Virus record (IMG/VR): IMGVR_UViG_3300027770_001980
Coordinates: 1-64,000 of that record
Length of the DNA: 64,000 bases
Direction: 5' to 3' (one strand)
The notes beneath the pieces were generated by a model. That model searched no databases and was not told where the DNA came from. It saw only the letters and a program-made list of their open reading frames with translations. The position numbers and the translations under genes are program-made. The first letter of the stretch is position 1, and each line of letters begins with the position of its first letter. This document shows positions 7,212 through 18,512 of the stretch, piece after piece.

Positions 7212-7222
7212 TTTTATTTTGT

Positions 7223-7298: not shown

Positions 7299-7317
7299 AA
7301 CATATTAGGAGAATGCA

Positions 7318-7446: not shown

Positions 7447-7537
7447 CATGAAACGTTCAGGTAAACGATAGTGTCAATCTTAGATCCCGTATATGGTCTA
7501 GGGTTGGCACATTAAAGACAATTTAATATGCAATCAA

Positions 7538-7611
7538 CCCTCACAAACATTAAGGTGATGTAACCGGCTCTTAACCGGTAAAACACGGATCGTTACCGTG
7601 GTGTGGGACCA
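7538..7611 (+). tRNA. tRNA-Lys(CTT)
   Basis: ACCGG-ctCTTaa-CCGGT; variant T-loop ATCGTTA. Confidence 0.8.
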
Positions 7612-7617
7612 ATATAT

Positions 7618-7691
7618 GGGATCGTAACTTAAAAGTAAAGTATCGGACTTTTAATCCGACTAAGAAGGGGCAGTACCTTCCGGTCTCACCA
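7618..7691 (+). tRNA. tRNA-Lys(TTT)
   Basis: TCGGA-ctTTTaa-TCCGA; variant T-loop GGCAGTA. Confidence 0.82.
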
Positions 7692-7770
7692 TATAAAAAC
7701 ACATTGTCCTAGGCTGTGACCTAGTCCATCAGAAGTCCTTTGAGACAGAAACAATGTGTTTCTATATGGT
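7689..7770 (+). repeat. inverted-repeat-bracketed cassette B2
   Basis: CCATATAAAAACACATTGT / ACAATGTGTTCTCTATATGG; cargo hairpin CTAGG-CTGTGA-CCTAG. Confidence 0.75.
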
Positions 7771-7910
7771 AAAGAAGAAGCCGACATGGAAAGGTAGTGC
7801 AAAGGTATACAGTTGGTCTGGTTCGAAACAGAGTAAACTGATTGTATAATGAGCGTAGCACAACCCGCATCGCACGGGTAGTTAGTGGGTTCGATTCCCA
7901 TCTTTGTTAT
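7767..7910 (+). ncRNA. unassigned structured RNA with two T-loop mimics
   Basis: TCTG-GTTCGAAA-CAGA, ACCCG-catcgca-CGGGT, GTGGG-TTCGATT-CCCAT. Confidence 0.45.
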
Positions 7911-8025
7911 CATACATGAACACATTCAACGGTAAACAGGATACCTGGCAACTGGACGCAGGGGCTATCCCGAAGATGTAGGGCACTACCACCGTAAAGT
8001 CAGGAAATGAGTGTGTTCCTATATG
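7911..8025 (+). repeat. inverted-repeat-bracketed cassette B3
   Basis: CATACATGAACACATTCA / TGAGTGTGTTCCTATATG; inner ACGGT/ACCGT helix. Confidence 0.7.
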
Positions 8026-8100
8026 GTGTCTTTAGTGTAGTGGCCTGCACCCTGCTCTGTGAAAGCGGTAGTACCGGATCGATACCGGTAAGGCACCCCA
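8025..8100 (+). tRNA. tRNA-His(GTG)
   Basis: G-1 and C73, CTGCT-ctGTGaa-AGCGG. Confidence 0.88.
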
Positions 8101-8143
8101 ATATTTATTGTAGAGCATAAATACATTTATAAGGTGCTCTGCA

Positions 8144-8527
8144 ATGTTAAACTCAATATGTAAAAATTGTTCAAAAGAATTTATTAAAGGTCGAAATACA
8201 ACAGGGACATACTGTTCACTACCTTGCACTTTTGAATCTCAAAAAAAAGAAAGAAGAGAAAATTTCTTAGAAGGAAAAATGGTTAACCGTGGATTAATGA
8301 AACAACATATGGTTGATATTCACAGTTGGCAATGTATGTGTTGTAAAAACACTGAATGGTTAGGAGTGCCAATTCCGTTGGAGTTGGATCACATTGATGG
8401 TAATGCAGGAGACAATCGACCTGAAAATTTGCGATTGCTATGTCCAAACTGCCATGCACAGACTCCAACACATAAAGCAAAGAATAAAGGCAATGGCCGC
8501 GGGAGTCGCGGATTGCCCTGGTATTAA
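8144..8527 (+). CDS. HNH endonuclease
   Basis: LELDHIDGNAGDNRPENLRLLCPNCHAQT with Cys pairs. Confidence 0.85.
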   Translation: MLNSICKNCSKEFIKGRNTTGTYCSLPCTFESQKKERRENFLEGKMVNRGLMKQHMVDIHSWQCMCCKNTEWLGVPIPLELDHIDGNAGDNRPENLRLLCPNCHAQTPTHKAKNKGNGRGSRGLPWY

Positions 8528-8529
8528 TT

Positions 8530-8603
8530 CCTCTTGTAGTTAAATGGTATAACGGCCTCTTGATAAGTGGTTATTACAAGTTCGATTCTTGTCGAGAGGA
8601 CCA
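8530..8603 (+). tRNA. tRNA-Ile(GAT)
   Basis: ttGATaa loop, ACCA. Confidence 0.85.
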
Positions 8604-8610
8604 AGTTTAC

Positions 8611-8685
8611 GCCTGGTTAGTTCAGCGGAAGAACGTCTGCCCGATTAGCGGAATGTTGTAGGTTCGACTCCTACACCGGGTACCA
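8611..8685 (+). tRNA. tRNA-Ile(GAT)-like with variant loop
   Basis: TCTGC-ccGATta-GCGGA (C33, U37); otherwise a normal cloverleaf. Confidence 0.7.
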
Positions 8686-8692
8686 AATCAAT

Positions 8693-8767
8693 GCGCCCGT
8701 AGTATAATGGATAATACACTAGGCTACGAACTTAGGAATGGTGGTTCGATTCCATCCGGGCGCACCA
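8693..8767 (+). tRNA. tRNA-Arg(ACG)
   Basis: CTAGG-ctACGaa-CTTAG. Confidence 0.9.
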
Positions 8768-8775
8768 ATAGTTAA

Positions 8776-8865
8776 GGAAGCGTGGCAGAGCCCGGCTTAT
8801 TGCAGCAGTCTTGAAAACTGCCGACCCGAAAGGGTCCGTGAGTTCGAATCTCACCGCTTCCGCCA
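8776..8865 (+). tRNA. tRNA-Ser(TGA)
   Basis: GCAGT-ctTGAaa-ACTGC, long variable arm. Confidence 0.92.
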
Positions 8866-8882
8866 ATACAATAAATAAGTCT

Positions 8883-9626
8883 ATGCGAATACATGAACTT
8901 ATTGTAGAAACTACTGAGGAAGATCGTGCTATCATTAGCCTTGCTGATGTTATCTATAAGGATCTACAGCAATATGCTGATACAGAATTAGACTACGATG
9001 AAACAGGTGTGATGCACATTGGACGCATCGGTGATCTGTTTGATACTCCGATTCCCGGACTTGATCGCGTGAGATTAGAAATATCTTCAGATGAGTCCAT
9101 AGTGGATCTGGCACGTAGACTTCACGGTAAGGCTACACCGTCAGATAGTCATTTTGGACAATGGGATCCTATGGAGAAGGCGATATCTTTAAATGCTGAT
9201 TACTTGAGCTCTAATCGTATGCGTAGTGTCATAGCACATGAATTAAGACATGCCATGGACGATATGAAATCGTTGAATAGGGCTAACCAAAGTACACGAT
9301 ATCGTACAGCAAGGAAGCCCGAGCATCAAGCAGATAAAGATGGTGCTTATCAAGCACAACCTGCAGAAATCAATGCTAGGTTTATCGAAGCGTTGAATGT
9401 GTTAGTGCCCGTCATACCAAAGTTGGCAAATTTAGAACCTGCTGCATTTAGAACAAAGATGACAGCATATATAAACAAAGCATTTGAACTTAAAGACATC
9501 GCAGATTATTATCCAGAAAAGACAGCAAGTCCACACTATAAGAGATTGCTGCAACGAGCATGGGCTTTTATTGAAAAAGAGCTGGCTCACATACGATCAC
9601 AAACAGTTGACACAGCGGCGGAATAA
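8883..9626 (+). CDS. putative Zn metallopeptidase-like protein
   Basis: HExxH (AHELRH) plus downstream EINA; start moved to MRIHEL because the track start lies inside the tRNA. Confidence 0.55.
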   Translation: MRIHELIVETTEEDRAIISLADVIYKDLQQYADTELDYDETGVMHIGRIGDLFDTPIPGLDRVRLEISSDESIVDLARRLHGKATPSDSHFGQWDPMEKAISLNADYLSSNRMRSVIAHELRHAMDDMKSLNRANQSTRYRTARKPEHQADKDGAYQAQPAEINARFIEALNVLVPVIPKLANLEPAAFRTKMTAYINKAFELKDIADYYPEKTASPHYKRLLQRAWAFIEKELAHIRSQTVDTAAE

Positions 9627-9635
9627 GTATATAAT
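9607..9635 (+). promoter_or_regulatory. sigma70 promoter (internal to array)
   Basis: TTGACA-17-TATAAT. Confidence 0.8.
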
Positions 9636-9641
9636 ATACTT

Positions 9642-9750
9642 GCGACCGTGAGTGGAACATGGCAGACCTCCGGACCGGGGATTCTCGGCGAGGGATGGGG
9701 CGAAGTCTTAGACACAGCCTTTGTAGGTTCAAACCCTACCGGTCGTACCA
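9642..9750 (+). ncRNA. Leu-type tRNA-like RNA with expanded central domain (109 nt)
   Basis: GCGACCG/CGGTCGT acceptor + ACCA, Leu-like D-loop, T-arm; no canonical anticodon arm. Confidence 0.6.
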
Positions 9751-9762
9751 GTTAAGAATTAA

Positions 9763-9851
9763 GGAATGGTCCCATAATGGTATTGGAGCAGATTGCTAAT
9801 CTGTCGGTCGTTTAATACGGCTTCCGAGTTCGAGTCTCGGTCATTCCGCCA
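9763..9851 (+). tRNA. tRNA-Ser(GCT)
   Basis: GCAGA-ttGCTaa-TCTGT, long variable arm. Confidence 0.9.
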
Positions 9852-9872
9852 AGTTGATAAAAGAAGAATTAT

Positions 9873-10670
9873 ATGATTTTAGATTGTGTTACATTTTTTA
9901 ATGAGTTAGAATTATTAGAGGGTAGATTAGAATACCTGTATGATACCGTAGACTATTTTATCATAGTTGAAAGTGATACAACTCATAGTGGTCACCCTAA
10001 ACCTTTAAACTATTTGCCTAACATACAGAGATATAAAAAATATCTGGACAAGATAATTTATTTTCCGTATCCGGCAGAAATTAAAGATCTAAATATCGAT
10101 CAAACTCTTGATAAATTTGATTACGATTCCGCACATTGGAAAATAGAGAAAAGACAAAGAAGTCATATTCTTAATGCGATAAAATTTTTCAAGGATGACG
10201 ATATAGTATTGATCAGTGATGTTGATGAGATTCCTTCTAAATCTGCTATCGAGATAGCATCCGAGCAGTTAGGAAAATCAGCAGCAGCATTTTCATTATC
10301 ACAGGATTTTTTCTTTTATAATTTTGCTCAGAGGCAAAGTTTTCCGTGGAAAGGTACTGTTGTTTCTACAAACAAATTTGTTCAACAACAAGGTCCGCAG
10401 TGGCTTCGTGATATGCGTTGGGATATTCCAACAATATTTCAAGGTGGATATCATTTGAGCTACTGGGGTGATCCAGAACGTATCGCAACTAAGATACAGA
10501 ACTTTGCACATCAGGAACTCAACAAAGAAACCTTTACAGATACCGAACGTATAAAAGAAAGAATTAAATCAGGTAACGATCCGTTTGATCGTCAACCATT
10601 GATTCCTGTAGAACCGGAATCAATTCCAAAAGACATTTATGACATATTCAACAAATATGGCAGTAGTTAA
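9873..10670 (+). CDS. GT17-family (GnT-III-like) glycosyltransferase
   Basis: FFNELELLEGRL, VESDTTHSG, SDVDEIP, GYHLSY, KIQNFAHQE. Confidence 0.8.
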   Translation: MILDCVTFFNELELLEGRLEYLYDTVDYFIIVESDTTHSGHPKPLNYLPNIQRYKKYLDKIIYFPYPAEIKDLNIDQTLDKFDYDSAHWKIEKRQRSHILNAIKFFKDDDIVLISDVDEIPSKSAIEIASEQLGKSAAAFSLSQDFFFYNFAQRQSFPWKGTVVSTNKFVQQQGPQWLRDMRWDIPTIFQGGYHLSYWGDPERIATKIQNFAHQELNKETFTDTERIKERIKSGNDPFDRQPLIPVEPESIPKDIYDIFNKYGSS

Positions 10671-10674
10671 TTTG

Positions 10675-10763
10675 TATCTCTGGTGTAATGGTATTGGAGC
10701 GGATTGCTAATCCGTCGAGTTGCGAAAGCAGCTTTCTGAGTTCGAGTCTCAGTCATTCCGCCA
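10675..10763 (+). pseudogene. chimeric tRNA-Ser(GCT) with foreign 5' end
   Basis: D-loop to CCA resembles the 9763 Ser; 5' TATCTCT cannot pair with 3' TCATTCC. Confidence 0.7.
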
Positions 10764-10770
10764 AATAAAT

Positions 10771-10847
10771 GAGTCAGTAGTTCCAATTGGCAGAACGTTG
10801 GTCTCCAAAACCAAATGTTGTAGGTTCAAATCCTACCTGGCTCGCCA
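10771..10847 (+). tRNA. tRNA-Trp(CCA)
   Basis: TTGGT-ctCCAaa-ACCAA. Confidence 0.92.
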
Positions 10848-10871
10848 AACAAAGATAGTAAATAATAGTAT

Positions 10872-10945
10872 GCGGGTATGATGTAAAGGTAACCTGAAAC
10901 CTTGCCAAGGTTTATTTGAGAGTTCGATTCTCTCTACCCGCTCCA
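10872..10945 (+). tRNA. tRNA-Gly(GCC), copy 2
   Basis: AAACC-ttGCCaa-GGTTT. Confidence 0.9.
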
Positions 10946-10949
10946 AATA

Positions 10950-11045
10950 GGCCGGACCTGTATCCATATTCCGGCTCCGCTGACGCGAAAACAGGATGGG
11001 CTGCGCTCACGGGGTTTGATTGTTTCCCGACACAACAATAACAAT
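10950..11045 (+). ncRNA. unassigned pseudoknot-forming RNA
   Basis: GCCGGA/TCCGGC stem whose loop CCTGT can pair with ACAGG (10991-95). Confidence 0.4.
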
Positions 11046-11059
11046 CACCAAACATATGG

Positions 11060-11104
11060 CCTCACCCTCTAGCAACATAGTTCTACGGTGAGGTTTTCTT
11101 TTTT
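11060..11104 (+). terminator. terminator-like hairpin inside array
   Basis: CCTCACC/GGTGAGG with a long loop, followed by a T-rich tract. Confidence 0.45.
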
Positions 11105-11165
11105 AGGATAGCAACAGCAAACATTTAAAAACTTTTCTTGAACAAAAGCCAAAAATGCTATCCTG
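11105..11165 (+). ncRNA. CAGCAA-handle RNA E4
   Basis: AGGATAGCA/TGCTATCCT helix, ACAGCAAA, hairpin CTTTT-ctTGAac-AAAAG. Confidence 0.7.
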
Positions 11166-11174
11166 TTTTATTAT

Positions 11175-11250
11175 GCCATAGTAGCTCCAATGGTAGAGCA
11201 GCGGACTGAAAATTCGTGTGTTGCTGGTTCGAATCCAGCCTATGGTACCA
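11175..11250 (+). tRNA. tRNA-Phe(GAA)
   Basis: GCGGA-ctGAAaa-TTCGT. Confidence 0.92.
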
Positions 11251-11258
11251 ATTTATAA

Positions 11259-11266
11259 TATAAATA
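11259..11266 (+). promoter_or_regulatory. T4-like late promoter TATAAATA
   Basis: Exact octamer just upstream of the ATG; it also occurs at 13684, 49547, 52268 (+) and 27083, 44861, 51988 (-). Confidence 0.6.
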
Positions 11267-11271
11267 TTTTT

Positions 11272-11991
11272 ATGAAAATTGCAATATTACTATCCGGACA
11301 ACCAAGATTTACTCAAGAGTTTCAATTATTTTTAGATAATTTAGTAGGTTATGATCAAGCAGATTGGTTTGTTTACATGACCAATAATAATCACGATCCT
11401 TTTAAAGATAATCGCATTAAAATTCCAGAGACCTGGATAAATTATGAAATAGATTGGGCCAGAGAGACTATAACAAGAAATCTTCCTCCTAACAATTTTC
11501 TCAGACGTTTCGAAATATCGAATGTACACGAACAAATTTTTCCAACTCTTCGAGAAGAACATCTATCTGGTAATCAAGCTATTTTCAAAATGCACTATAA
11601 TATATTTAAAACAAATCAATTAAGAGAAGAATATGAAACCTCTTATAATTTTAAATACGATGCAATTGTTAGAGCCCGCCCCGATGTTGGACTTAATCAG
11701 ATAATAGATCTTCGAAAATTTGATTTGTCGACCAGGGGAGTCTTTATGCCTTGCCCTTTTTATGGACACCCAGGGAGAGAGTCTAATGATTTGATTGGAT
11801 TTGGTAATTCGGAGGTCATGTCTATTTACAGTAATGCCTTACATCATTTCAAAGAATATAGTGATGCTGGAGAAATAGTTTGCCCTGAAACACTATTATC
11901 ACGGCACTTGATTACAAATAATGTATCACGTATAAAATCTGATTTTAGTCACATTTTTCGAACTCTGCCTTTAGATCCTAAATGGTTTTGA
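11272..11991 (+). CDS. glycosyltransferase-like protein, paralog 1
   Basis: MKIAILLSGQPRF...KYDAIVRARPD...NDLIGFG; start reassigned out of tRNA-Phe. Confidence 0.6.
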   Translation: MKIAILLSGQPRFTQEFQLFLDNLVGYDQADWFVYMTNNNHDPFKDNRIKIPETWINYEIDWARETITRNLPPNNFLRRFEISNVHEQIFPTLREEHLSGNQAIFKMHYNIFKTNQLREEYETSYNFKYDAIVRARPDVGLNQIIDLRKFDLSTRGVFMPCPFYGHPGRESNDLIGFGNSEVMSIYSNALHHFKEYSDAGEIVCPETLLSRHLITNNVSRIKSDFSHIFRTLPLDPKWF

Positions 11992-12010
11992 GTGTCTGAA
12001 CTAATTACAT

Positions 12011-12097
12011 GGAAGATAGAAGTGCCGGGCACTAAGCAACTTGGAAAGTTGTTCCACTCTGAAAGGGGTGACAGTTCGACTCTGTTATCTTCCTCCA
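12011..12097 (+). tRNA. tRNA-Ser(GGA)
   Basis: GCAAC-ttGGAaa-GTTGT, long variable arm, atypical D-arm. Confidence 0.8.
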
Positions 12098-12117
12098 ACA
12101 CACTAAAGGAGCATAAC

Positions 12118-12180
12118 ATGTTAGTAATAGGATTATTAGTAATCATGGGTATGCTCTATTTGATTATTAGAAAGTTATAA
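12118..12180 (+). CDS. 20-aa hydrophobic peptide
   Basis: AAGGAG RBS; MLVIGLLVIMGMLYLIIRKL*. Confidence 0.5.
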   Translation: MLVIGLLVIMGMLYLIIRKL

Positions 12181-12181
12181 T

Positions 12182-12257
12182 GGTAGAGTAGCATAGCGGC
12201 TAATGCACCAGCTTCATACGCTGTCGATCGTGGGTTCGAGTCCCACCTCTACTACCA
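12182..12257 (+). tRNA. tRNA-Met(CAT)
   Basis: CAGC-ttCATac-GCTG. Confidence 0.85.
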
Positions 12258-12262
12258 ATCAA

Positions 12263-12382
12263 TGTCGTTGTCGTCTAATGGTAGGACGCTTATAAAAGGT
12301 TATCCTGTTAAGGATACAGTCAGCACAATCAAATTCCATGTCAAGGAAGAGATCTGGGTTCGAATCCCAGCTGCGACCCCCA
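12263..12382 (+). ncRNA. tRNA-like RNA with branched anticodon domain (~120 nt)
   Basis: Acceptor, D-arm, T-arm and CCA present; the centre holds TATCC-TGTTAA-GGATA and TTCC-atGTCaa-GGAA hairpins. Confidence 0.65.
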
Positions 12383-12388
12383 GTTTAT

Positions 12389-12464
12389 GTACATGAGCCC
12401 GAAGATTGAGGGTACCGTTAATTGAGACGGCGAAAGGCGATTGAGATGATACCCATGTACGCCA
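12389..12464 (+). ncRNA. 76-nt tRNA-like RNA lacking a TPsiC loop
   Basis: Perfect GTACATG/CATGTAC + GCCA; GCCC/GGGT and CCGTT/GACGG arms. Confidence 0.55.
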
Positions 12465-12466
12465 AG

Positions 12467-12615
12467 TTTCGAGATAGACGTAGAGATCGAGTCCCCTGTA
12501 CGCTAGTGCCCTATTTCTTGAGCATGACACACCAGTAGCAGTATCGGGTCAAGCAAAACTCTCTCATACGAGACAAACCAATGAGTCCTTGAGAAAGATA
12601 GTTGGAGGCTCGAAA
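12467..12615 (+). ncRNA. unassigned structured RNA (~150 nt)
   Basis: TTTCGAG/CTCGAAA closure; CTTGA/TCAAG and CTCAT/ATGAG helices. Confidence 0.45.
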
Positions 12616-12623
12616 ACCTATAT

Positions 12624-12709
12624 GCTCTGGTGCAGGGAATTGGAAGACCGGCAACGTTGAGAACGTTGTGACCTAACAGGTGTGGGTTCGAGTCCCACCC
12701 AGAGCACCA
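12624..12709 (+). tRNA. tRNA-Leu(GAG)
   Basis: CAACG-ttGAGaa-CGTTG. Confidence 0.88.
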
Positions 12710-12713
12710 ATTT

Positions 12714-12787
12714 AGTTCCTTAGTTTAATGGCAGAACACTACCTCGACACGGTGACAATGAAAGTTCGATTCTTTCAGGAACTACCA
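12714..12787 (+). tRNA. tRNA-Val(GAC)
   Basis: TACC-tcGACac-GGTG (C33 variant). Confidence 0.8.
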
Positions 12788-12877
12788 TATATAAAAACAT
12801 ATTAGGCCCTCGGTCGTAGACTTGAGTTGCGGGTATAGTGCCTTCCAAGCCGTGGACTCGAATGTGTTTTTATATAT
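12787..12877 (+). repeat. inverted-repeat-bracketed cassette B4
   Basis: ATATATAAAAACATATT / AATGTGTTTTTATATAT (17 bp); cargo has tRNA-Gly-like GCGGGTATAGT and GC-ctTCCaa-GC. Confidence 0.75.
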
Positions 12878-12905
12878 GAAAGTTCGATTCTTTCAGGAAC
12901 TACCA
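12876..12905 (+). repeat. 30-bp direct repeat of the tRNA-Val 3' end
   Basis: ATGAAAGTTCGATTCTTTCAGGAACTACCA, identical to 12758-12787. Confidence 0.9.
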
Positions 12906-12906
12906 A

Positions 12907-12981
12907 CTCTCTATAGTTCAATGGATAGAACACATTCCTCCTAAGAATGGGATGCAGGTTCGATTCCTGCTGGAGAGACCA
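12907..12981 (+). tRNA. tRNA-Arg(CCT)
   Basis: CATTC-ctCCTaa-GAATG. Confidence 0.92.
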
Positions 12982-12993
12982 AATAAATATTAT

Positions 12994-13070
12994 GCCCCGT
13001 TACGCTAATTGGTAGTGCGGATTCTCTCAAAAGGAGTTGGCTGTCTGTTCGAATCAGACACGGGGTACCA
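12994..13070 (+). tRNA. tRNA-Leu(CAA), short variable arm
   Basis: ATTCT-ctCAAaa-GGAGT; 77 nt. Confidence 0.78.
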
Positions 13071-13075
13071 CTTAT

Positions 13076-13150
13076 CGGTCTTTAGTGAAATGGATATCAT
13101 CTTTGTCTTCGAAACAAAAGTTGTGGGTTCGATCCCTGCAAGACCGGCCA
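13076..13150 (+). tRNA. tRNA-Arg(TCG)
   Basis: TTTGT-ctTCGaa-ACAAA. Confidence 0.9.
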
Positions 13151-13154
13151 ATCT

Positions 13155-13228
13155 GCTCCTATAGGTAAATGGTATACCAGCACTTTGGTAAAGTGCAATT
13201 ACAAGTTCGATTCTTGTTAGGAGCACCA
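13155..13228 (+). tRNA. tRNA-Thr(GGT)
   Basis: GCACT-ttGGTaa-AGTGC. Confidence 0.9.
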
Positions 13229-13236
13229 AAAAAAAC

Positions 13237-13265
13237 TTGACACACCGACAGAAATACAGTATAAT
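13237..13265 (+). promoter_or_regulatory. sigma70 promoter (internal to array)
   Basis: TTGACA-17-TATAAT. Confidence 0.8.
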
Positions 13266-13330
13266 TACTACATAGACAGCAAACGATAGAGTTAGTTGTT
13301 GTGTGTTCATTAACAATACAAGTTGGTTTT

Positions 13331-13414
13331 GCGGGTGTGGTGGAATGGTATACACAGCAGACTTAAAATCTGCCGCTGAAAAGCATGCCGGTTCGAGTCC
13401 GGCCACCCGCACCA
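13331..13414 (+). tRNA. tRNA-Leu(TAA)
   Basis: GCAGA-ctTAAaa-TCTGC. Confidence 0.92.
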
Positions 13415-13518
13415 TATTGAAACACATTGTGGAGAGCACTGTGTAGATTGAGAAGGTTTGATTCCGACTCACTACATCACTCGGTATCCTGCGGCCGCAA
13501 CAGTGTGCTTCAATATGG
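13412..13518 (+). repeat. inverted-repeat-bracketed cassette B5
   Basis: CCATATTGAAACACATTGT / ACAGTGTGCTTCAATATGG; cargo TGTAG/CTACA helix with GGTTTGATTCC T-loop mimic. Confidence 0.75.
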
Positions 13519-13522
13519 TGTT

Positions 13523-13641
13523 ATATTAAAATATACTTTTCGTCTCCAGTAGCCCAAACCCGGGGGAATCGCATATTGAGAATGTGCATAGCACAACGGT
13601 ACAGCAAGCATAAGACACTTGTTGGAAGTATGTTTTAATAT
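13523..13641 (+). repeat. inverted-repeat-bracketed cassette B6
   Basis: ATATTAAAATATACTT / AAGTATGTTTTAATAT; cargo GCATATT/AATGTGC hairpin. Confidence 0.72.
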
Positions 13642-13647
13642 GATTCC

Positions 13648-13680
13648 CTGGCGTTCGTATAATGGATAATACAGGGGATT
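13648..13680 (+). pseudogene. 5' half of a split tRNA-Arg(TCT)
   Basis: CTGGCGT acceptor strand, D-arm, GGGGA-TT; its partner half is at 14447-14488. Confidence 0.8.
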
Positions 13681-13698
13681 TAGTATAAATAGATATAT

Positions 13699-13775
13699 GC
13701 GACTGTAGCTCAGTTGGATAGAGTACCCGGCTTCTACCCGGATTGTCGGGGGTTCGAATCCCTCCAGTCGCACCA
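13699..13775 (+). tRNA. tRNA-Arg(TCT), replacement copy inside the insertion
   Basis: CCGG-ctTCTac-CCGG, full cloverleaf. Confidence 0.88.
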
Positions 13776-13790
13776 TTTAGTAGAAAATGT

Positions 13791-14429
13791 ATGTATCAAA
13801 AACTAACAAACTGTAAGCATTGTAATATCTCTTTAGAGAGTATGAATGCCAACGAAAGGGCAAACCATTCGAGATGGTGTACATCAAACCCTAAACGGGT
13901 TGAATATGTAAATGCGCTGGCCAAGCATAGAGAAAATATTGTCGCTCCTCGAAATCAATTTGTTAAAGCAAAAGACGAGGGACGACCTGTTCCAAAAGGA
14001 ACAATGACCGGAAAACCCGGAACGATGTTAGGTAAGAAACATTCTCTGGAAACAAAGCAACATCTTAAAGAAAAAGCGTTAGCAAGCCCACATAGAAGAT
14101 TAGTTAGGTCCATTAGAAAATATACACAAAAGGATGGAACTATTGTTAATTTAGATTCTTCTTGGGAAGAAGCATTGGCAATTCGCCTTGATGAACTTAA
14201 TGTTAATTGGATCCGACCCAAGCCGATAAAATGGATAGATGACAATGGTATAACCCATAACTATTTTCCAGACTTTTATCTTGTTGATTTCGACGTATAT
14301 TTAGATCCAAAAAATCCTTATGCTATTAAGGCACAGGAAAGCAAAATAAAATGTTTGACAAAACAGATAAAAAATCTTATAATCATAAGAGGATTAGAAG
14401 AGTGTAAAAATTATACCCCTATAGTTTAA
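13791..14429 (+). CDS. putative homing endonuclease (NUMOD3-like repeat + PD-(D/E)xK domain)
   Basis: GKKHSLETKQHL; DSSWE...YFPDFYL...YLDPKN. Confidence 0.7.
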   Translation: MYQKLTNCKHCNISLESMNANERANHSRWCTSNPKRVEYVNALAKHRENIVAPRNQFVKAKDEGRPVPKGTMTGKPGTMLGKKHSLETKQHLKEKALASPHRRLVRSIRKYTQKDGTIVNLDSSWEEALAIRLDELNVNWIRPKPIKWIDDNGITHNYFPDFYLVDFDVYLDPKNPYAIKAQESKIKCLTKQIKNLIIIRGLEECKNYTPIV

Positions 14430-14488
14430 TGGTAAAACGGCGGATTTCTACTCCCTAAATAGCAGTTCGATTCTGTTACGCCGGACCA
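14415..14488 (+). pseudogene. chimeric tRNA: foreign 5' half + 3' half of Arg(TCT)
   Basis: 3' TCTAC-TCCCT...ACGCCGG-ACCA complements 13648-13680, not the adjacent ACCCCTAT...GGCGGATT. Confidence 0.75.
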
Positions 14489-14499
14489 AAGATTTTATT

Positions 14500-14589
14500 G
14501 CGAGCGAGACTTGGAGTCCGAGGGGTCTTATATGCCCTTTCCGCCAGATTAGCGGCTTTGAGAGAGTTCGATTCTCTCCGCTCGTACCA
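14500..14589 (+). tRNA. tRNA-Ile(TAT)-like with long variable arm
   Basis: GGGT-ctTATat-GCCC, short D-arm, extra CCGC-cagatta-GCGG hairpin. Confidence 0.65.
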
Positions 14590-14638
14590 CCTATCACAAT
14601 TAGGTTCTTTTGTTAAAATATCATATAATTAATATATT

Positions 14639-15340
14639 ATGAACAATGAAAAACATCAACCTATTACAGTGGTAGTGCCTACCATGTGGAGACATTCTCC
14701 ATTTTTAGATTTTGCACAGGACTTCTTAGAATTAAATGTAGTCGAACATTTAATCATCATCGACAATGATATCTCAAGAAGACCCAACCATCCGGTATTG
14801 ACCAATTCCAAAATAACTATTTTTGAATTTGGAAAAAATATATTTGTCAATCCTGCTTGGAACTTAGGAGTCAACAACAGCAAAACTAATATTGTTTGCA
14901 TATTGAATGATGATTTAAATTTTGATATCAGATTATTCAATAGAGTATCTAAGTTTATTAAACCTGATATGGGTGCAATAGGATTGAGTAACGGAATAGC
15001 AGAATTTGGACAAACAATTTTAACTGACGGAATGATCAATTTTGAACCATTTCATGGACAGATATGTGAAGGATTTGGTAATCTCATGTTTGTACATAAA
15101 TCTACATGGAAAGATATACCCGAAGGGTTGAATATCGCATATGGAGATAATTTCATTTTCGAACAAAATCTTTACAACAATCGAACAAACTATTTTATTG
15201 TTAATATGTTTCATCACCATGCAGCATCTACCACAGTTAAAGAAGTATTAAAAGATAAAGATGTGAAAGATGTTTTTTGGCTACGAGAAAGTCTTCTATA
15301 TAAAGACATCAAGGTCAAATTAATGAATAGAACATTTTAG
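14639..15340 (+). CDS. GT2-like glycosyltransferase
   Basis: VVVPTMW, IIDND, VNPAWNLG, LNDD, YGDNFI. Confidence 0.7.
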   Translation: MNNEKHQPITVVVPTMWRHSPFLDFAQDFLELNVVEHLIIIDNDISRRPNHPVLTNSKITIFEFGKNIFVNPAWNLGVNNSKTNIVCILNDDLNFDIRLFNRVSKFIKPDMGAIGLSNGIAEFGQTILTDGMINFEPFHGQICEGFGNLMFVHKSTWKDIPEGLNIAYGDNFIFEQNLYNNRTNYFIVNMFHHHAASTTVKEVLKDKDVKDVFWLRESLLYKDIKVKLMNRTF

Positions 15341-15350
15341 AAAGAATAGT

Positions 15351-15425
15351 GGGCTTTTAGCTTAATGGTAAAGCAGTCGACTCATAATCGATTGAGTGTA
15401 GGTTCAATTCCTACAAAGCCCACCA
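15351..15425 (+). tRNA. tRNA CAT (Ile2/lysidine-type or Met)
   Basis: GTCGA-ctCATaa-TCGAT; GGGC acceptor resembles Ile2. Confidence 0.82.
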
Positions 15426-15466
15426 TATCTCAAAGTTAGAGATAAATACTCTAACCGGAGCACGTA

Positions 15467-15895
15467 ATGTTAAAAGAATATACATGTAAAGATTGTGGTA
15501 AAGAAGGAAAAGAAAATTTTTATCAATATCGATATCAATGCAAATCTTGTTGGAATAAACGCACATATCAATCAAGTAGAGATAAATTAGATTTACTCAT
15601 ACACGAAAGAGGCGGAAAATGCGAAAGATGTGGATACAATAAATGCATGGATGCTTTACAGTGGCATCATATAGATCCTACAATTAAAGAGTTTGGAATA
15701 AGCAAACAACGAGGTGCATCGATAGAAGTATTACGAAAAGAAATTGATAAGTGTTCTTTATTATGTGCAAACTGTCATGTCGAGGTACATGCAGAAATGC
15801 GAAATAAAGGATATAAAGTTGTCAGAATTACCCATCCAGAATTTAAAGAAAGATATTTTTCTGGTAAGGGATTTTTAGATTTAATGCGGGTGTGA
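15467..15895 (+). CDS. HNH endonuclease
   Basis: CERCGYNKCMDALQWHHIDP...LLCANCHVEVH. Confidence 0.85.
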   Translation: MLKEYTCKDCGKEGKENFYQYRYQCKSCWNKRTYQSSRDKLDLLIHERGGKCERCGYNKCMDALQWHHIDPTIKEFGISKQRGASIEVLRKEIDKCSLLCANCHVEVHAEMRNKGYKVVRITHPEFKERYFSGKGFLDLMRV

Positions 15896-15972
15896 TGAAA
15901 TTGGTAGACTTCCGGTCCTTAGAAGTCCGGGTTCGAAAGAGCGTGCTGGTTCGAGTCCAGTCACCCGCACCA
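15886..15972 (+). tRNA. tRNA-Leu(TAG)
   Basis: ctTAGaa loop, long variable arm. Confidence 0.85.
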
Positions 15973-15979
15973 TTATAGG

Positions 15980-16008
15980 TTGACAACTTACCTACATAGT
16001 TGTATAAT
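15980..16008 (+). promoter_or_regulatory. sigma70 promoter
   Basis: TTGACA-17-TATAAT. Confidence 0.8.
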
Positions 16009-16029
16009 TAATTTTAATAAAAGGAAAGT

Positions 16030-16206
16030 ATGAAAACAACTGCAACATTTCGATTGAATAAGCGTTTCAAAACACTTATCTCTGCTATGCCATTTAAGAG
16101 CCAAGAACAACGTGACCATTTTCGTCACATGATGATCGAGGCACAGGTAGCAGCAAATACCATTGTCAAGAGTTCTAAGGACCGTAACAACAACCGAGGT
16201 GAATAA
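16030..16206 (+). CDS. hypothetical protein (58 aa)
   Basis: AAGGA RBS; MKTTATFRLNKRFK...RGE*; coupled to rpoZ. Confidence 0.65.
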   Translation: MKTTATFRLNKRFKTLISAMPFKSQEQRDHFRHMMIEAQVAANTIVKSSKDRNNNRGE

Positions 16207-16430
16207 TGAAAACTCCAGATTTTGTTAACAGTCTTGACACCGACAAGTGTGTGTCTAACATTGGTAGCCGATTTGATTTAGTTATTGTTGCTGCTATTCG
16301 TGCCCGCGAGTTGAATCGTGGTCATAGAAAAATGGTCAATAGTCCAAATGGTAATATTGTTAGTGCTCTGCAAGAAATCGAAGCAGGACACATTGGGCGT
16401 GATTACTTGCGAAAGGTTCGTCGACCATGA
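16206..16430 (+). CDS. rpoZ: RNA polymerase omega subunit homolog
   Basis: SRFDLVIVAAIRAREL...IVSALQEIEAGHI matches the RpoZ family core. Confidence 0.8.
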   Translation: MKTPDFVNSLDTDKCVSNIGSRFDLVIVAAIRARELNRGHRKMVNSPNGNIVSALQEIEAGHIGRDYLRKVRRP

Positions 16431-16603
16431 GCAAAGGTTCCAGACAGCGTCCAACAGATCTAAATAAGTTTCGATCAAACTACGATGCTATCTTCCGAAA
16501 GCCTTCTCCAAAAGAAGTAGATGATGCTCAAGCAGAAGATGAAGCATTCAAGAGAGTTGAAGAACAGCAATCACAAGTTCGAGACAGTGACCAAGGCGGC
16601 TAA
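16427..16603 (+). CDS. hypothetical protein (58 aa)
   Basis: MSKGSRQRPTDLNKFRSNYDAIFRK...GG*; ATGA overlap. Confidence 0.6.
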   Translation: MSKGSRQRPTDLNKFRSNYDAIFRKPSPKEVDDAQAEDEAFKRVEEQQSQVRDSDQGG

Positions 16604-16616
16604 TAAATAGAGATGC

Positions 16617-16690
16617 GCCCTACTAGTACAATGGTAGTACACTGGTTTTGTAATCCTGTGATGGCAGTTCGATTCTGTCGTAGGGCACCA
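16617..16690 (+). tRNA. tRNA-Thr(TGT), copy 2
   Basis: ttTGTaa loop; weak anticodon stem. Confidence 0.8.
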
Positions 16691-16698
16691 AGAGATAT

Positions 16699-16772
16699 GC
16701 GGGGTTCGTAAAATGGTATTACCTTAGCCTTCCAAGCTAAAGTCAGGAGTTCGATTCTCCTACCCCGCTCCA
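16699..16772 (+). tRNA. tRNA-Gly(TCC), copy 2
   Basis: TTAGC-ctTCCaa-GCTAA. Confidence 0.92.
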
Positions 16773-17041
16773 AGTCTATGCAATATGTTTAGTGCTCTAT
16801 TACGCAGCCGTTGAGTAAACTCCGACTCTGATAACACGCCTTTAGCAAGATTACACTTGCGACATGTTACTTGTAAGTTATTGAAATCAGTGGTGCCACC
16901 TTGTGATTCTGGAATGACATGATCCATATGTATTTCAGAGTCTGACAAATCGTCATCACAATAAACACAGTAGAGGCCATCGCGTTCAATAACTCTACGG
17001 CGTAGATTTAATGGTATGCGTTCTTTTTTTTGTAGCATCAA
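16760..17041 (-). CDS. HNH endonuclease
   Basis: RDGLYCVYC...MDHVIPESQGG...NLQVTCRKCNLAKG. Confidence 0.85.
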   Translation of the reverse strand: MMLQKKERIPLNLRRRVIERDGLYCVYCDDDLSDSEIHMDHVIPESQGGTTDFNNLQVTCRKCNLAKGVLSESEFTQRLRNRALNILHRLGAG

Positions 17042-17076
17042 AAATATTTAGTAAATAGAGTTTTAATGTATTAAGA

Positions 17077-17151
17077 GCCTGGTTAGCTCAGGGGGAGAGC
17101 GGCTGCTTTACACGCAGCGGGTCGGCGGTTCGAAACCGTCACCGGGTACCA
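17077..17151 (+). tRNA. tRNA-Val(TAC)
   Basis: GCTGC-ttTACac-GCAGC. Confidence 0.92.
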
Positions 17152-17159
17152 GTTTTATT

Positions 17160-17891
17160 TTAAATCCATCTTGGATCCAATGGTAAATCTCTCAGAGAAT
17201 TATCAAAATTTCCGGGTGTATAAGAAATTTTGTTTGAATTTAAATGATGTCCAAGAATAGCTTCTGGACCAAAATCCAATACTTGTTTTTCATATTCTTC
17301 AAGATGATTTATGACATCCGAATAGATTGTCATAACATCAGAGTTTCCAAATGCAAATTGATCGTTTGACTGAGAAACCTCTCCATACCATCTATTGCCA
17401 GGCATGATAACAACTTGAGAACTTAGATCATAATTGTTGATATTTAATTCAATTGGTAATCCAATATCAGTTCGTGTTCTAATTACTGCATCATATTTAA
17501 AATTATTCTCTTGTTCGTAGTTTACTCTTAACTGATTAACCTTGTATAGATTATAATACATATTGAATATATTATCGGTACCTATACCTCGATAATCTCG
17601 AACAGGAGGCCATTGTTGAAGATGAACATCGGATATTTCAAATTTTTTAAGAAAATTGTTGTTTGGTAAATTTTCAATTATTTTGGATGTAGCCCATTCA
17701 ATGTCATAATTAATCCATTTATCGTGAGGTGGAATAATATGAGAATTTTTTATTTTTAAGTCTTCTCTGGTAGGACTGTTGGTAAGATACACAAACCAAT
17801 CTGCCTGATTGTAACCTTTTAAATTATTTAGAAAATTTCTGAGGTCGCCGGTGAATCTCGGTTCTCCAGGAAGTAGTATAGCTATTCTCAT
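17160..17891 (-). CDS. glycosyltransferase-like protein, paralog 2
   Basis: MRIAILLPGEPRFTGD...KYDAVIRTRTD...NDQFAFG. Confidence 0.6.
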   Translation of the reverse strand: MRIAILLPGEPRFTGDLRNFLNNLKGYNQADWFVYLTNSPTREDLKIKNSHIIPPHDKWINYDIEWATSKIIENLPNNNFLKKFEISDVHLQQWPPVRDYRGIGTDNIFNMYYNLYKVNQLRVNYEQENNFKYDAVIRTRTDIGLPIELNINNYDLSSQVVIMPGNRWYGEVSQSNDQFAFGNSDVMTIYSDVINHLEEYEKQVLDFGPEAILGHHLNSNKISYTPGNFDNSLRDLPLDPRWI

Positions 17892-17922
17892 AAATAATAT
17901 TTATGTTAGCATATAACGATGA

Positions 17923-18159
17923 TTGATTGATTATTTATTGGCTTTTTTTGCTATCTTCTTCACTGACATCTTTTATACATATTACTTGAAGGCTGTGCAT
18001 GAAGAGCAAACACTAAAGGCCAGTTGCTGGGCAACGATAGTCTATGTGGTTGCGGCAGTGGCAATTATAGAGTATAATAGTAATCATATGTTATTGATTC
18101 CAGCGGCAGCGGGTGCATTTTGTGGCACTTGGGTTGGAATGAAAATTAGAAAGAGATAA
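17923..18159 (+). CDS. small membrane protein
   Basis: About three hydrophobic segments. Confidence 0.6.
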   Translation: MIDYLLAFFAIFFTDIFYTYYLKAVHEEQTLKASCWATIVYVVAAVAIIEYNSNHMLLIPAAAGAFCGTWVGMKIRKR

Positions 18160-18160
18160 T

Positions 18161-18239
18161 CTCCGGTTCGCCTAACCTGGTTATGGCACCTCGTTTGGGA
18201 CGAGGAATAATGTGAGTTCGAATCCCACACTGGAGACCA
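18161..18239 (+). tRNA. tRNA-Pro(TGG), copy 2
   Basis: CCTCG-ttTGGga-CGAGG. Confidence 0.88.
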
Positions 18240-18246
18240 AAGAACA

Positions 18247-18410
18247 GCGGATAAGTTACATTATCCAGTATGAGTCGCTAAGGTAGGTACCTAATCCTTA
18301 GGGCAAGTAATAGTACACAATAGCGATGTAACAGGAAGTAGTGATCTACTCACCGGGACGGGCCTCAAAACGAATCCCACCAAGTTAACTCGCCATGGCA
18401 CACGGCGTAC
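18247..18410 (+). ncRNA. unassigned structured RNA
   Basis: GGATAA/TTATCC, TAAGG/CCTTA, AGTAG/CTACT, GGGA/TCCC and CGCC/GGCG hairpins between two tRNAs. Confidence 0.45.
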
Positions 18411-18438
18411 AATAGGACAAATTGTGTGGCACGAATAT

Positions 18439-18512
18439 TGCGGGATAGAGTAACGGTAATTCAGAAGTCTCATAAGCTTCAAATCTTGGTTCGATTCCAG
18501 GTCCCGCTTCCA
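18439..18512 (+). tRNA. tRNA-Met(CAT), possibly initiator-like
   Basis: GAAGT-ctCATaa-GCTTC; 1:72 mismatch, but lacks the GGG/CCC anticodon stem. Confidence 0.8.

What the first reader, a model, noticed from the sequence alone, without database searches (positions are those of the whole stretch)
16030..16603. Phage-encoded RNA polymerase omega subunit lacking the MAR N-terminus
Seen: an RpoZ core under a consensus early promoter, with N-terminus MKTPDF. Known: in E. coli the omega N-terminal residues (A2, R3, V4) form ppGpp site 1 with beta-prime. Inference: swapping omega could blunt the stringent response and keep tRNA promoters active when tRNAs are uncharged, which fits the array theme.
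Basis: partly seen in the sequence, partly recalled or inferred. Interest (0 to 1): 0.62.

Follow-up and report, generated by a model that had tools for sequence, protein, structure and literature searches.

The report
Jumbo-phage RNA polymerase omega subunit gene
A giant freshwater phage carries its own copy of the smallest subunit (omega) of bacterial RNA polymerase, inside its tRNA gene array. This copy has lost the N-terminal residues that help bind the starvation signal ppGpp, but sister phages keep them, so escape from ppGpp cannot be the only reason phages carry omega.

Summary
Window 16206-16430 (+) encodes a 74-aa RpoZ/omega homologue (Pfam PF01192 50.9 bits, TIGR00690 41.9 bits, both above cut-off). 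Its model superposes on E. coli omega. It starts MKTPDF, has no MAR, and lies in a coupled three-ORF cassette behind a perfect TTGACA-17-TATAAT promoter, between tRNA genes. The contig is a 221-kb T4-like jumbo myovirus from lakes. No beta or beta' gene was detected in it or in two complete relatives, so this omega must act on host RNA polymerase.

Viral omegas form one group, always in tRNA or tmRNA arrays, and under purifying selection. All 100 proteobacterial omegas examined start MAR. The window's sublineage replaced MAR(I/V)T with a variable extension plus an invariant DT(D/E)KC.

- Sister phages of the same lineage (DNA polymerase 61-65% identical) encode omegas that keep MARIT.
- One contig carries both types.
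- ppGpp site 1 is the weaker of the two sites at initiation.
- The phage promoters have AT-rich discriminators and should resist ppGpp anyway.

Most likely this is a functional replacement omega, with loss of ppGpp site 1 as a derived extra. I found no published phage-encoded omega.

The parts
15886..15972 (+). tRNA-Leu(UAG) immediately upstream of the promoter
   Evidence: ARAGORN. It is part of a 41-tRNA array at 5650-18512.
15980..16008 (+). Perfect sigma-70 consensus promoter: TTGACA, 17 nt, TATAAT (-10 at 16003-16008), followed by an AT-rich discriminator
   Evidence: There are 19 perfect copies in the 221-kb record, clustered at 5-64 kb (+) and 216-221 kb (-). The closest relatives have the same promoter upstream of omega.
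16030..16206 (+). orfA, a 58-aa basic protein of unknown function and first gene of the cassette, with an AAGGA Shine-Dalgarno at 16021-16025
   Evidence: No Pfam, NCBIfam, PHROG or Atlas match. Homologues lie near omega in only 3 of 23 viral loci.
16206..16430 (+). Phage omega (RpoZ homologue), 74 aa, MAR-less, with a 6-residue N-terminal extension and the DTDKC motif. GAGGTG Shine-Dalgarno at 16196-16201; the start overlaps the orfA stop (TAATG).
   Evidence: Family membership. Fold. Predicted beta' interface. Family and conservation. Purifying selection.
16427..16603 (+). orfC, 58 aa with a basic N-terminal half and an acidic C-terminal half, unknown function. Its start overlaps the omega stop (ATGA).
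   Evidence: No family match. The Atlas gives only viral hypothetical clusters below 0.9. It occurs within 1.5 kb of omega in 7 of 23 viral loci.
16617..16772 (+). tRNA-Thr(UGU) and tRNA-Gly(UCC), starting 14 nt after orfC with no terminator between them. They are probably co-transcribed with the cassette.
   Evidence: No + strand terminator-like site between 16008 and 16772. Co-transcription is an inference.

Best explanation
The gene encodes a functional omega subunit made early in infection from a strong host-type promoter. It binds the host beta' subunit in place of, or in addition to, host omega. This keeps host core polymerase omega-loaded while the phage, which has no detectable polymerase of its own, drives heavy transcription of its early genes and its 41 tRNAs.

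In the sublineage that includes this window, the ancestral N-terminus MAR(I/V)T has been replaced by a variable 5-12 residue extension followed by an invariant DT(D/E)KC. This removes the free N-terminus and Arg3 and puts an Asp where Thr5 was. Polymerase carrying this omega most probably no longer forms ppGpp site 1. It would then escape the site-1 effects of ppGpp, which are modest on initiation and include slowed elongation, in starved lake hosts that are probably Betaproteobacteria.

Shown: family membership, fold, conservation, gene order, and loss of MAR. Inferred: assembly into host RNA polymerase (supported only by a model), loss of ppGpp binding, and any benefit to the phage.
For: - Family and fold. 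The ORF passes the curated cut-offs for omega. The AF2 model (pLDDT 81) superposes on E. coli omega at TM 0.72-0.75 and rmsd 2.0 A.
- Predicted binding. Complex prediction used E. coli beta' 340-942 plus 1131-1407. ipSAE was 0.76 against a best control of 0.01, run agreement at least 84%, partner pLDDT at least 75. That mark was reached by 51 of 78 solved complexes and 2 of 108 mismatched pairs.
- Predicted contacts. Contacts are at beta' 474-488, 905-912 and 1360-1364, and also at 417-418 and 613-615, which are the site-1 residues R417 and K615. They touch omega residues 8 and 10-13.
- No phage polymerase. No beta, beta' or sigma-70 region 2 was found in this record or in complete relatives G003 and G004. 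The large ORFs are baseplate and tail proteins.
- One viral group. 21 viral-type omegas lie on one side of a branch with SH-aLRT 96.
- Conserved context. All 22 viral-type loci scanned (20, 2) place omega in or beside a same-strand tRNA array.
- Selection. pN 0.13 against pS 0.72 between the window and L003.
- MAR pattern. All 100 proteobacterial omegas start MAR. All 46 full-length close family members lack it and keep DT(D/E)KC.
- Literature. Omega residues 2-5 and beta' R417 and K615 coordinate the ppGpp phosphates (PMC7676912). The MAR motif predicts site 1 (PMC6912228). Site 1 slows elongating polymerase (PMC13192712). 17-25% of purified E. coli polymerase particles lacked omega (PMC13192712), so there is room for exchange.
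- Host. A proteobacterial, probably betaproteobacterial, host is likely. The best cellular matches are 66-68-aa MARITVEDCL..IPNRFQL omegas that align end to end. Sister phages carry Rfam beta_tmRNA at 102-171 bits. The genome uses sigma-70 consensus promoters and Shine-Dalgarno sites.
Against: - Omegas in phages of the same lineage retain MARIT (L008-L012, L019/G004, L023, L024), so MAR loss is not required for the phage's use of omega.
- Site 2/DksA dominates ppGpp control of initiation, and E. coli lacking omega still shows stringent control in vivo (PMC7676912 and Gentry 1991 cited there).
- An E. coli polymerase with omega delta2-5 plus three beta' substitutions still bound ppGpp only about 2-fold worse (PMC7676912).
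- The phage promoters have AT-rich discriminators and should be intrinsically insensitive to ppGpp.
- The complex score may reflect memory of the many solved E. coli polymerase structures, and E. coli beta' is a stand-in for an unknown host.
- The host is not identified. Two omega-bearing tRNA-array contigs were binned with a Crocinitomicaceae (Bacteroidota) MAG.
- No clear RNA evidence of expression was found.
Confidence: 0.55

Rival explanations
1. Generic omega supply. The phage omega simply raises or maintains omega occupancy, aiding beta' folding and assembly, stabilising transcribing polymerase and favouring sigma-70. The altered N-terminus has no consequence for ppGpp control that matters to the phage.
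For: - MAR-retaining and MAR-less omegas occur in sister phages in the same tRNA-array context, and they share the viral C-terminal motif EIEAGHIGRDYL.
- The residues before DTDKC vary in length and sequence, as expected for an unconstrained tail.
- Omega is known as an assembly chaperone and a stabiliser of transcribing polymerase (PMC5811629, PMC13192885).
Against: - The segment replacing (I/V)TVEDC is not degenerate. It is a new, nearly invariant motif, DT(D/E)KC, kept across at least 46 protein clusters.
- The complex model places it at beta' R417 and K615.
- Every proteobacterial omega examined keeps MAR, so its loss is unusual.
Confidence: 0.25
2. Docking platform. The phage omega gives host polymerase a phage-specific surface (the DTDKC segment with its invariant Cys, or the GHIGRDYL C-terminus). 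A phage regulator, perhaps orfA, orfC or a late-gene activator, would use it to redirect transcription, as GafA uses omega to activate gene-transfer-agent genes.
For: - A direct activator-omega interaction is documented for RcGTA (PMC9638019).
- The viral-specific conserved motifs differ from all bacterial omegas.
- Omega is translationally coupled to two small unknown ORFs.
Against: - orfA and orfC are near omega in only a minority of relatives.
- No partner has been identified.
- In the model the DTDKC segment faces beta' rather than solvent.
Confidence: 0.12
3. Host shut-off. The protein is a dominant-negative omega that poisons assembly or activity of host polymerase.
For: Many phages encode small polymerase-binding inhibitors (general knowledge). 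The gene sits behind an early promoter.
Against: - No phage-encoded polymerase was found in this record or in two complete relatives, and the genome is full of host-type promoters. The phage therefore needs an active host polymerase.
- The beta'-contacting core is conserved like a normal omega.
Confidence: 0.04
4. Non-functional passenger. It is a recently captured host gene, or a bacterial contig mis-called as viral.
For: tRNA arrays of large phages accumulate small mobile ORFs, for example the HNH endonucleases at 15467-15895 and 16760-17041. One 'phage' database hit did turn out to be bacterial.
Against: - No cellular omega is more than 51% identical.
- The gene is kept across phages whose DNA polymerases are only 61-75% identical, with pN well below pS.
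- The contig encodes T4-like virion proteins.
Confidence: 0.02

Closest known systems
Short omega (RpoZ, 66-68 aa) of Betaproteobacteria/Burkholderiales-type genomes (loci L119-L139)
   Same: It is the best-scoring cellular relative: 41-44% identity and up to 54.7 bits, aligned end to end. It has the same length class, the same RGH..K.V.S...V.AL.EI.AG..G...L.KV layout, a Cys at the EDC position, and no acidic C-terminal tail.
   Different: The cellular proteins all start MARIT(V/I)EDC and have IPNRFQL. The phage protein has a 6-residue extension, DTDKC, IGSRFDL and the viral GHIGRDYL motif. It is encoded in a phage tRNA array rather than a chromosome.
E. coli omega and its delta2-5 variant (ppGpp site-1-defective RNA polymerase)
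   Same: About 39-46% identity in the core and a superposable fold. The predicted contacts fall on the beta' regions that bind omega and include site-1 residues R417 and K615. Like delta2-5, the phage protein lacks A2, R3, V4 and T5 (PMC7676912).
   Different: The phage protein adds residues rather than deleting them, puts Asp at the T5 position, lacks the 20-residue acidic C-terminal tail, and is a natural, selected variant.
MAR-retaining omegas of sister jumbo phages (e.g. G004, 343 kb, 99% complete; L008-L012, L019, L023, L024)
   Same: Same viral group (SH-aLRT 96), same tRNA/tmRNA-array context, same C-terminal GHIGRDYL motif and similar length. They come from phages of one lineage, with DNA polymerase 61-65% identical.
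   Different: They keep MARITSEKAV, the site-1 motif, and are 44-54% identical to the window's protein.
Rpb6 homologues of nucleocytoplasmic large DNA viruses
   Same: They are virus-encoded members of the same Rpb6/omega superfamily (general knowledge, not tested here).
   Different: Those viruses encode the whole multisubunit polymerase, and their Rpb6 belongs to it. Here no large subunits are encoded, so the subunit must join the host enzyme.
Other phage measures against the stringent response (phage MazG; portal proteins, PMC13483052)
   Same: They share the proposed goal of escaping growth restriction by (p)ppGpp. A MazG-like ORF also lies in this window at 42546-42818.
   Different: They use unrelated proteins and mechanisms. 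None of them replaces a polymerase subunit.

Membership tests
RNA polymerase omega / Rpb6 (PF01192; TIGR00690 rpoZ) | Sequence profile match above the curated cut-off | tested here: met
   PF01192 scores 50.9 bits against a cut-off of 26. TIGR00690 scores 41.9 bits against 23.6. The genome-wide scan gives a single hit.
RNA polymerase omega / Rpb6 (PF01192; TIGR00690 rpoZ) | Helical omega fold | tested here: met
   The AF2 model has pLDDT 81 and helices at 12-19, 22-37, 50-59 and 66-71. The top 30 Foldseek hits are all omega chains, with TM 0.72-0.75 and rmsd 2.0-2.4 A to E. coli omega.
RNA polymerase omega / Rpb6 (PF01192; TIGR00690 rpoZ) | Binds beta' (regions D and G and the C-terminal tail) as a polymerase subunit | tested here: inconclusive
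   This is a model only. ipSAE is 0.76 against a best control of 0.01, and the contacts are at beta' 474-488, 905-912 and 1360-1364. The score may come from memory of solved E. coli complexes, and the host beta' is unknown. Pull-down or reconstitution is needed.
RNA polymerase omega / Rpb6 (PF01192; TIGR00690 rpoZ) | Chromosomal context typical of proteobacterial rpoZ (gmk-rpoZ-spoT) | tested here: not met
   The gene lies between tRNA genes in a phage array. The typical context is seen in the bacterial record. Context is not a defining feature of the protein family.
ppGpp site-1-competent (proteobacterial) omega | N-terminal Met-Ala-Arg motif, with residues 2-5 lying directly at the beta' R417/K615 pocket | tested here: not met
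   The N-terminus is MKTPDFVNSLDT, and N8, S9, L10, D11 align with A2, R3, V4, T5. 100 of 100 proteobacterial omegas have MAR. The motif is defined in PMC6912228 and PMC7676912.
ppGpp site-1-competent (proteobacterial) omega | Measured ppGpp binding or response of polymerase carrying this omega | not testable with these tools
   This needs DRaCALA or in vitro transcription with reconstituted enzyme.
Subunit of a phage-encoded multisubunit RNA polymerase (phiKZ/AR9 type) | Phage genes for beta- and beta'-like subunits | tested here: not met
   PF00623 and PF00562 give no match at E <= 0.1 in G000, G003 (100% complete), G004 (99% complete) or G005. The large ORFs match baseplate and tail-fibre PHROGs. 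Very divergent subunits cannot be fully excluded.

The most novel reading that the evidence does not exclude
A lineage of freshwater jumbo phages reprograms host RNA polymerase by swapping in its own omega subunit. In one sublineage the swap deletes ppGpp site 1, making the enzyme partly blind to the stringent response. This would be the first phage-encoded replacement of a core polymerase subunit used as an anti-starvation strategy. The MAR+ and MAR- phage omegas would form a natural allelic series for studying what site 1 does in vivo.
Probability: 0.35. Interest if true: 0.8.

Novelty: new variant of a known kind. Interest (0 to 1): 0.6.

Why it matters
Omega is the least understood core subunit of bacterial RNA polymerase, and the in vivo role of ppGpp site 1 is still debated. 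Phages are known to modify host polymerase with small inhibitors, sigma-like factors or ADP-ribosylation. I found no report of a phage that supplies a core subunit of the host enzyme. There is no PHROG family for it and no genuine hit among 50,697 deposited phage records.

A conserved viral omega family would give a ready-made comparative experiment on several questions: what omega and site 1 contribute to transcription in slow-growing cells, how large phages keep tRNA and early transcription running in oligotrophic hosts, and whether omega exchanges on assembled polymerase. The family is always embedded in tRNA arrays and has natural MAR+ and MAR- forms, including one contig with both. It also flags a likely annotation trap, because these genes and their tRNA arrays get binned into bacterial MAGs.

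Tried and rejected
- Megablast of 15400-17200 against deposited phages found no match.
- tblastn of omega against the phage collection gave 8 hits. The one whose context I read ('Acinetobacter phage MD-2021a', gmk-rpoZ-spoT) is a bacterial chromosome stretch. Two records are Salmonella genomes by their titles. The remaining hits show the same 46% match as those genomes and were not followed up.
- PHROGs have no family for omega, orfA or orfC. Pfam and NCBIfam have nothing for orfA or orfC. The Atlas gave only sub-threshold viral hypothetical clusters for orfC and nothing for orfA.
- I considered a Bacteroidota origin or host, because two omega-bearing contigs sit in a Crocinitomicaceae MAG and one grouped with MAR-less viral omegas in the tree. 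I rejected the origin. Both contigs are tRNA arrays of the phage type. None of 150 other Bacteroidota genomes matches at 1e-4, whereas 377 of 401 Pseudomonadota genomes match at 0.01. The phage also uses TTGACA/TATAAT promoters and Shine-Dalgarno sites. A Bacteroidota host is not strictly excluded.
- A phage-encoded multisubunit polymerase, sigma-70, RelA/SpoT or DksA was not found in G000, G003, G004 or G005.
- Expression evidence is inconclusive. Contigs of one metatranscriptome run cover only diverged fragments of orfA and orfC, and none of the four runs covers the omega core. Contigs cannot show transcription.
- The complex prediction passed, but it is reported as model support only.

Full report
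**What is there.**
- The flagged span 16030-16603 holds three small + strand ORFs: orfA (16030-16206, 58 aa), the omega homologue (16206-16430, 74 aa) and orfC (16427-16603, 58 aa). They are joined by TAATG and ATGA overlaps.
- A perfect TTGACA-17-TATAAT promoter lies at 15980-16008. AAGGA and GAGGTG ribosome-binding sites precede orfA and omega.
- The cassette sits between tRNA-Leu (15886-15972) and tRNA-Thr/tRNA-Gly (16617-16772), inside an array of 41 same-strand tRNA genes at 5650-18512.
- No terminator-like site separates the promoter from the downstream tRNAs, so a joint mRNA-tRNA transcript is likely. This is an inference.

**Is it omega?**
- Only the middle ORF is omega. It passes Pfam PF01192 (50.9 bits, cut-off 26) and the NCBIfam equivalog TIGR00690 rpoZ (41.9 bits, cut-off 23.6).
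- Its closest solved relatives are the omegas of Vibrio cholerae and E. coli polymerase.
- An AlphaFold2 model (pLDDT 81) has four helices and a coil for residues 1-11. It superposes on E. coli omega at TM 0.72-0.75 and rmsd about 2 A.
- The HMMER alignment puts phage residues 14-68 on E. coli 8-64. The phage protein therefore has six extra N-terminal residues, with N8, S9, L10, D11 where E. coli has A2, R3, V4, T5.

**Is it a phage, and whose polymerase does it serve?**
- The window is the first 64 kb of a 221,356-bp IMG/VR virus record, estimated 62% complete, with 39% G+C.
- The record encodes T4-type baseplate wedge and hub proteins, tail fibres and virion proteins.
- Its family B DNA polymerase is nearest to Sinorhizobium phage Phosso (51%), Agrobacterium phage Atu_ph07 (45%) and the Rak2/GAP32 group (42%).
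- No beta, beta', sigma-70 region 2, RelA/SpoT or DksA gene was found in this record, nor in two essentially complete relatives (G003, 383 kb; G004, 343 kb) or in G005.
- The record carries 19 perfect sigma-70 consensus promoters, where about 0.03 are expected by chance. They cluster at 5-64 kb (+) and 216-221 kb (-). The phage therefore depends on host polymerase, and its omega must act on the host enzyme.
- I ran a complex prediction with E. coli beta' 340-942 and 1131-1407 as a stand-in. It scored ipSAE 0.76 against a best control of 0.01, with run agreement at least 84% and partner pLDDT at least 75. That mark was reached by 51 of 78 solved complexes and 2 of 108 mismatched pairs.
- The predicted contacts are at beta' 474-488, 905-912 and 1360-1364. 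In addition, beta' 417-418 and 613-615 touch omega residues 8 and 10-13.
- This supports binding in the normal omega position but does not show it, because the pass may come from memory of solved E. coli structures.

**The family.**
- 48 metagenomic proteins of 70-76 aa match at 54-100% identity, and 23 IMG/VR loci encode relatives. The contigs reach 383 kb.
- The sequence occurs in freshwater and lake metagenomes from several studies.
- In all 22 related viral-type loci scanned for tRNAs (20, 2), omega lies in or beside a same-strand tRNA array. In several loci a permuted tmRNA is also present.
- The gene is under purifying selection: pN 0.13 against pS 0.72 between the window and L003.
- The DNA polymerases of G003, G004 and G005 are 75%, 65% and 61% identical to the window's, far closer than any cultured phage, so this is one phage lineage.
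- In a maximum-likelihood tree the 21 viral-type omegas lie on one side of a branch with SH-aLRT 96, opposite 100 proteobacterial omegas. With 90 columns, the finer branching is not reliable.

**The N-terminus.**
- All 100 distinct proteobacterial omegas retrieved start MAR(V/I)T.
- The viral omegas come in two kinds.
- The window's kind has no MAR. It includes all 46 full-length members of the close family and the relatives L002-L007, L014-L017 (G003), L022, L025 and L150.
- In that kind, a stretch of 5-12 residues, variable in length and sequence, precedes a nearly invariant (I/V/L)-D-T-(D/E)-K-C. This replaces the bacterial (I/V)-T-V-E-D-(C/A).
- The other kind keeps MARITSEKAV or MARISSE. 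It includes L008-L013, L018, L019 (G004), L023 and L024. Two members of its branch have altered termini: L021 starts MAQ and one L020 copy starts MTESRARYT. Both kinds share the viral C-terminal motif EIEAGHIGRDYL.
- One 15-kb viral contig (L020) carries a DTDKC-type omega together with that MTESRARYT copy.
- Because the cellular side is uniformly MAR, the simplest reading is that MAR was ancestral in the viral group. It was then lost once at the base of the DTDKC sublineage, after which a new motif became fixed.

**Host.**
- The host is not identified.
- In an even sample of 401 Pseudomonadota genomes, 377 matched at E <= 0.01.
- The best matches are 66-68-aa omegas reading MARITVEDCL..IPNRFQL. 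They align end to end with the phage protein at up to 44% identity and 54.7 bits.
- None of 150 other Bacteroidota genomes matched at 1e-4.
- The tmRNAs in the MAR-retaining sister phages match Rfam beta_tmRNA at 102-171 bits, above the gathering score of 84.
- Shine-Dalgarno-like motifs precede 36% of crude ORF starts, against 7% background.
- Together with the sigma-70 consensus promoters, these points favour a proteobacterial, probably betaproteobacterial, host whose own omega would carry MAR.
- Against this, two omega-bearing tRNA-array contigs were binned into a Crocinitomicaceae MAG. I take that as mis-binning, but it could reflect co-abundance with a host.

**How it most likely works.**
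- The literature in the held library gives four relevant points:
  - Omega residues 2-5, with beta' R417 and K615, coordinate the ppGpp phosphates at site 1 (PMC7676912).
  - The MAR motif predicts site 1 and is conserved in Alpha-, Beta-, Gamma- and Deltaproteobacteria (PMC6912228).
  - Site 2 with DksA has the much larger effect on initiation (PMC7676912).
  - Site 1 allosterically slows elongating polymerase (PMC13192712).
- The window's omega lacks the free N-terminus at position 2 and lacks Arg3. It has Asp at the Thr5 position, and the model places this segment against R417 and K615.
- It is therefore reasonable to expect polymerase carrying this omega to lack a working site 1. This is an inference and has not been measured.

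- MAR-retaining omegas in sister phages show that the lineage's basic reason for encoding omega is something both forms share. The most plausible candidate is keeping host core polymerase omega-loaded, assembled and stable during very heavy early and tRNA transcription. Omega is sub-stoichiometric even in purified E. coli enzyme (PMC13192712).
- The phage promoters, including the one before this cassette, have consensus hexamers, 17-nt spacers and AT-rich discriminators. From established promoter kinetics these form stable open complexes and are little inhibited by ppGpp. Protection of the tRNA promoters is therefore not needed, and relief of elongation slowing would be the more plausible gain.
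- E. coli lacking omega still shows stringent control in vivo (Gentry 1991, cited in PMC7676912).

**Rival explanations.**
- Generic omega supply with a neutral N-terminal change (0.25).
- A phage-specific docking surface on polymerase, by analogy with GafA-omega (PMC9638019) (0.12).
- Host shut-off (0.04).
- A functionless passenger (0.02).

**Novelty.**
- The protein family is known, but a phage-encoded omega that serves the host enzyme appears undescribed.
- No paper in the held library reports one, and PHROGs v4 has no such family.
- The only 'phage' record annotated with rpoZ is a bacterial gmk-rpoZ-spoT region.
- I rate this a new variant of a known kind. It is of moderate to high interest, chiefly because the MAR+ and MAR- viral forms offer a natural experiment on ppGpp site 1.

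- Reads were laid on 1.8 kb only.
- No alternative genetic code was used.

Noticed in passing
window 5650-18512: An array of 41 same-strand tRNA genes covers nearly all amino acids, with several internal perfect sigma-70 promoters (5096, 9607, 13237, 14355, 15980). It includes a tRNA-Ile(UAU) at 14500-14589 with an atypical anticodon position. Rfam adds a further tRNA-like hit at 7618-7688.
   Followed up: partly
window 15467-15895 (+) and 16760-17041 (-): HNH endonuclease ORFs flank the omega cassette inside the tRNA array. The second is strong (HNH_5, 60 bits); the first is below the cut-off. They are probably homing endonucleases, which may explain why gene order around omega varies between relatives.
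   Followed up: partly
window 42043-43740: A 6-pyruvoyl-tetrahydropterin synthase/QueD-like ORF (42043-42549) overlaps a 90-aa MazG-like pyrophosphohydrolase ORF (42546-42818), followed by an epimerase/dehydratase-like ORF. MazG is also present in complete relatives G003 and G004. Whether it acts on (p)ppGpp is unknown.
   Followed up: partly
genome G000 216879-221043 (- strand), outside the window: Eight perfect consensus promoters share a conserved downstream sequence (TATAATACACACATAGACA...). They are spaced 200-1300 bp apart at the far end of the contig, suggesting a second early region or part of a terminal repeat.
   Followed up: no
L020 394-570 and 4974-5192: One 15-kb viral contig carries two omega genes of different N-terminal types, MKPTNVASRGTDINTDVCV and MTESRARYTSEEAAL, in one tRNA array.
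   Followed up: partly
L013, L018, L019, L021, L024: The MAR-retaining sister phages carry permuted tmRNA genes that match Rfam beta_tmRNA (102-171 bits), with tags such as ANDEVYALAA. L018 has two copies.
   Followed up: partly
L019 1291-1751 (G004): A GOLLD RNA (RF02032, 221 bits) lies in the tRNA array of the 343-kb sister phage, overlapping a tRNA-Arg. No GOLLD was found in window 1-30000.
   Followed up: no
L149 and L150 (genome G002, contigs C15 and C274): Two phage-type tRNA-array contigs, each with a MAR-less omega, are binned into a Crocinitomicaceae MAG. No other omega was detected in that MAG. This is either mis-binning or a hint about the host.
   Followed up: partly
L154 (CAKLQH020000003.1 146697-154909): A 240-kb record deposited as 'Acinetobacter phage MD-2021a' contains pilVW, ispH, gmk-rpoZ-spoT and bfr, which is bacterial chromosome. 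The label looks wrong.
   Followed up: partly
window 60556-62586, 283-1824 and 46603-49551: Other notable ORFs are a 676-aa protein with an autotransporter beta-domain (50 bits), a B12-binding radical SAM protein, and a 982-aa tail fibre with collagen repeats and an S74 chaperone domain.
   Followed up: no
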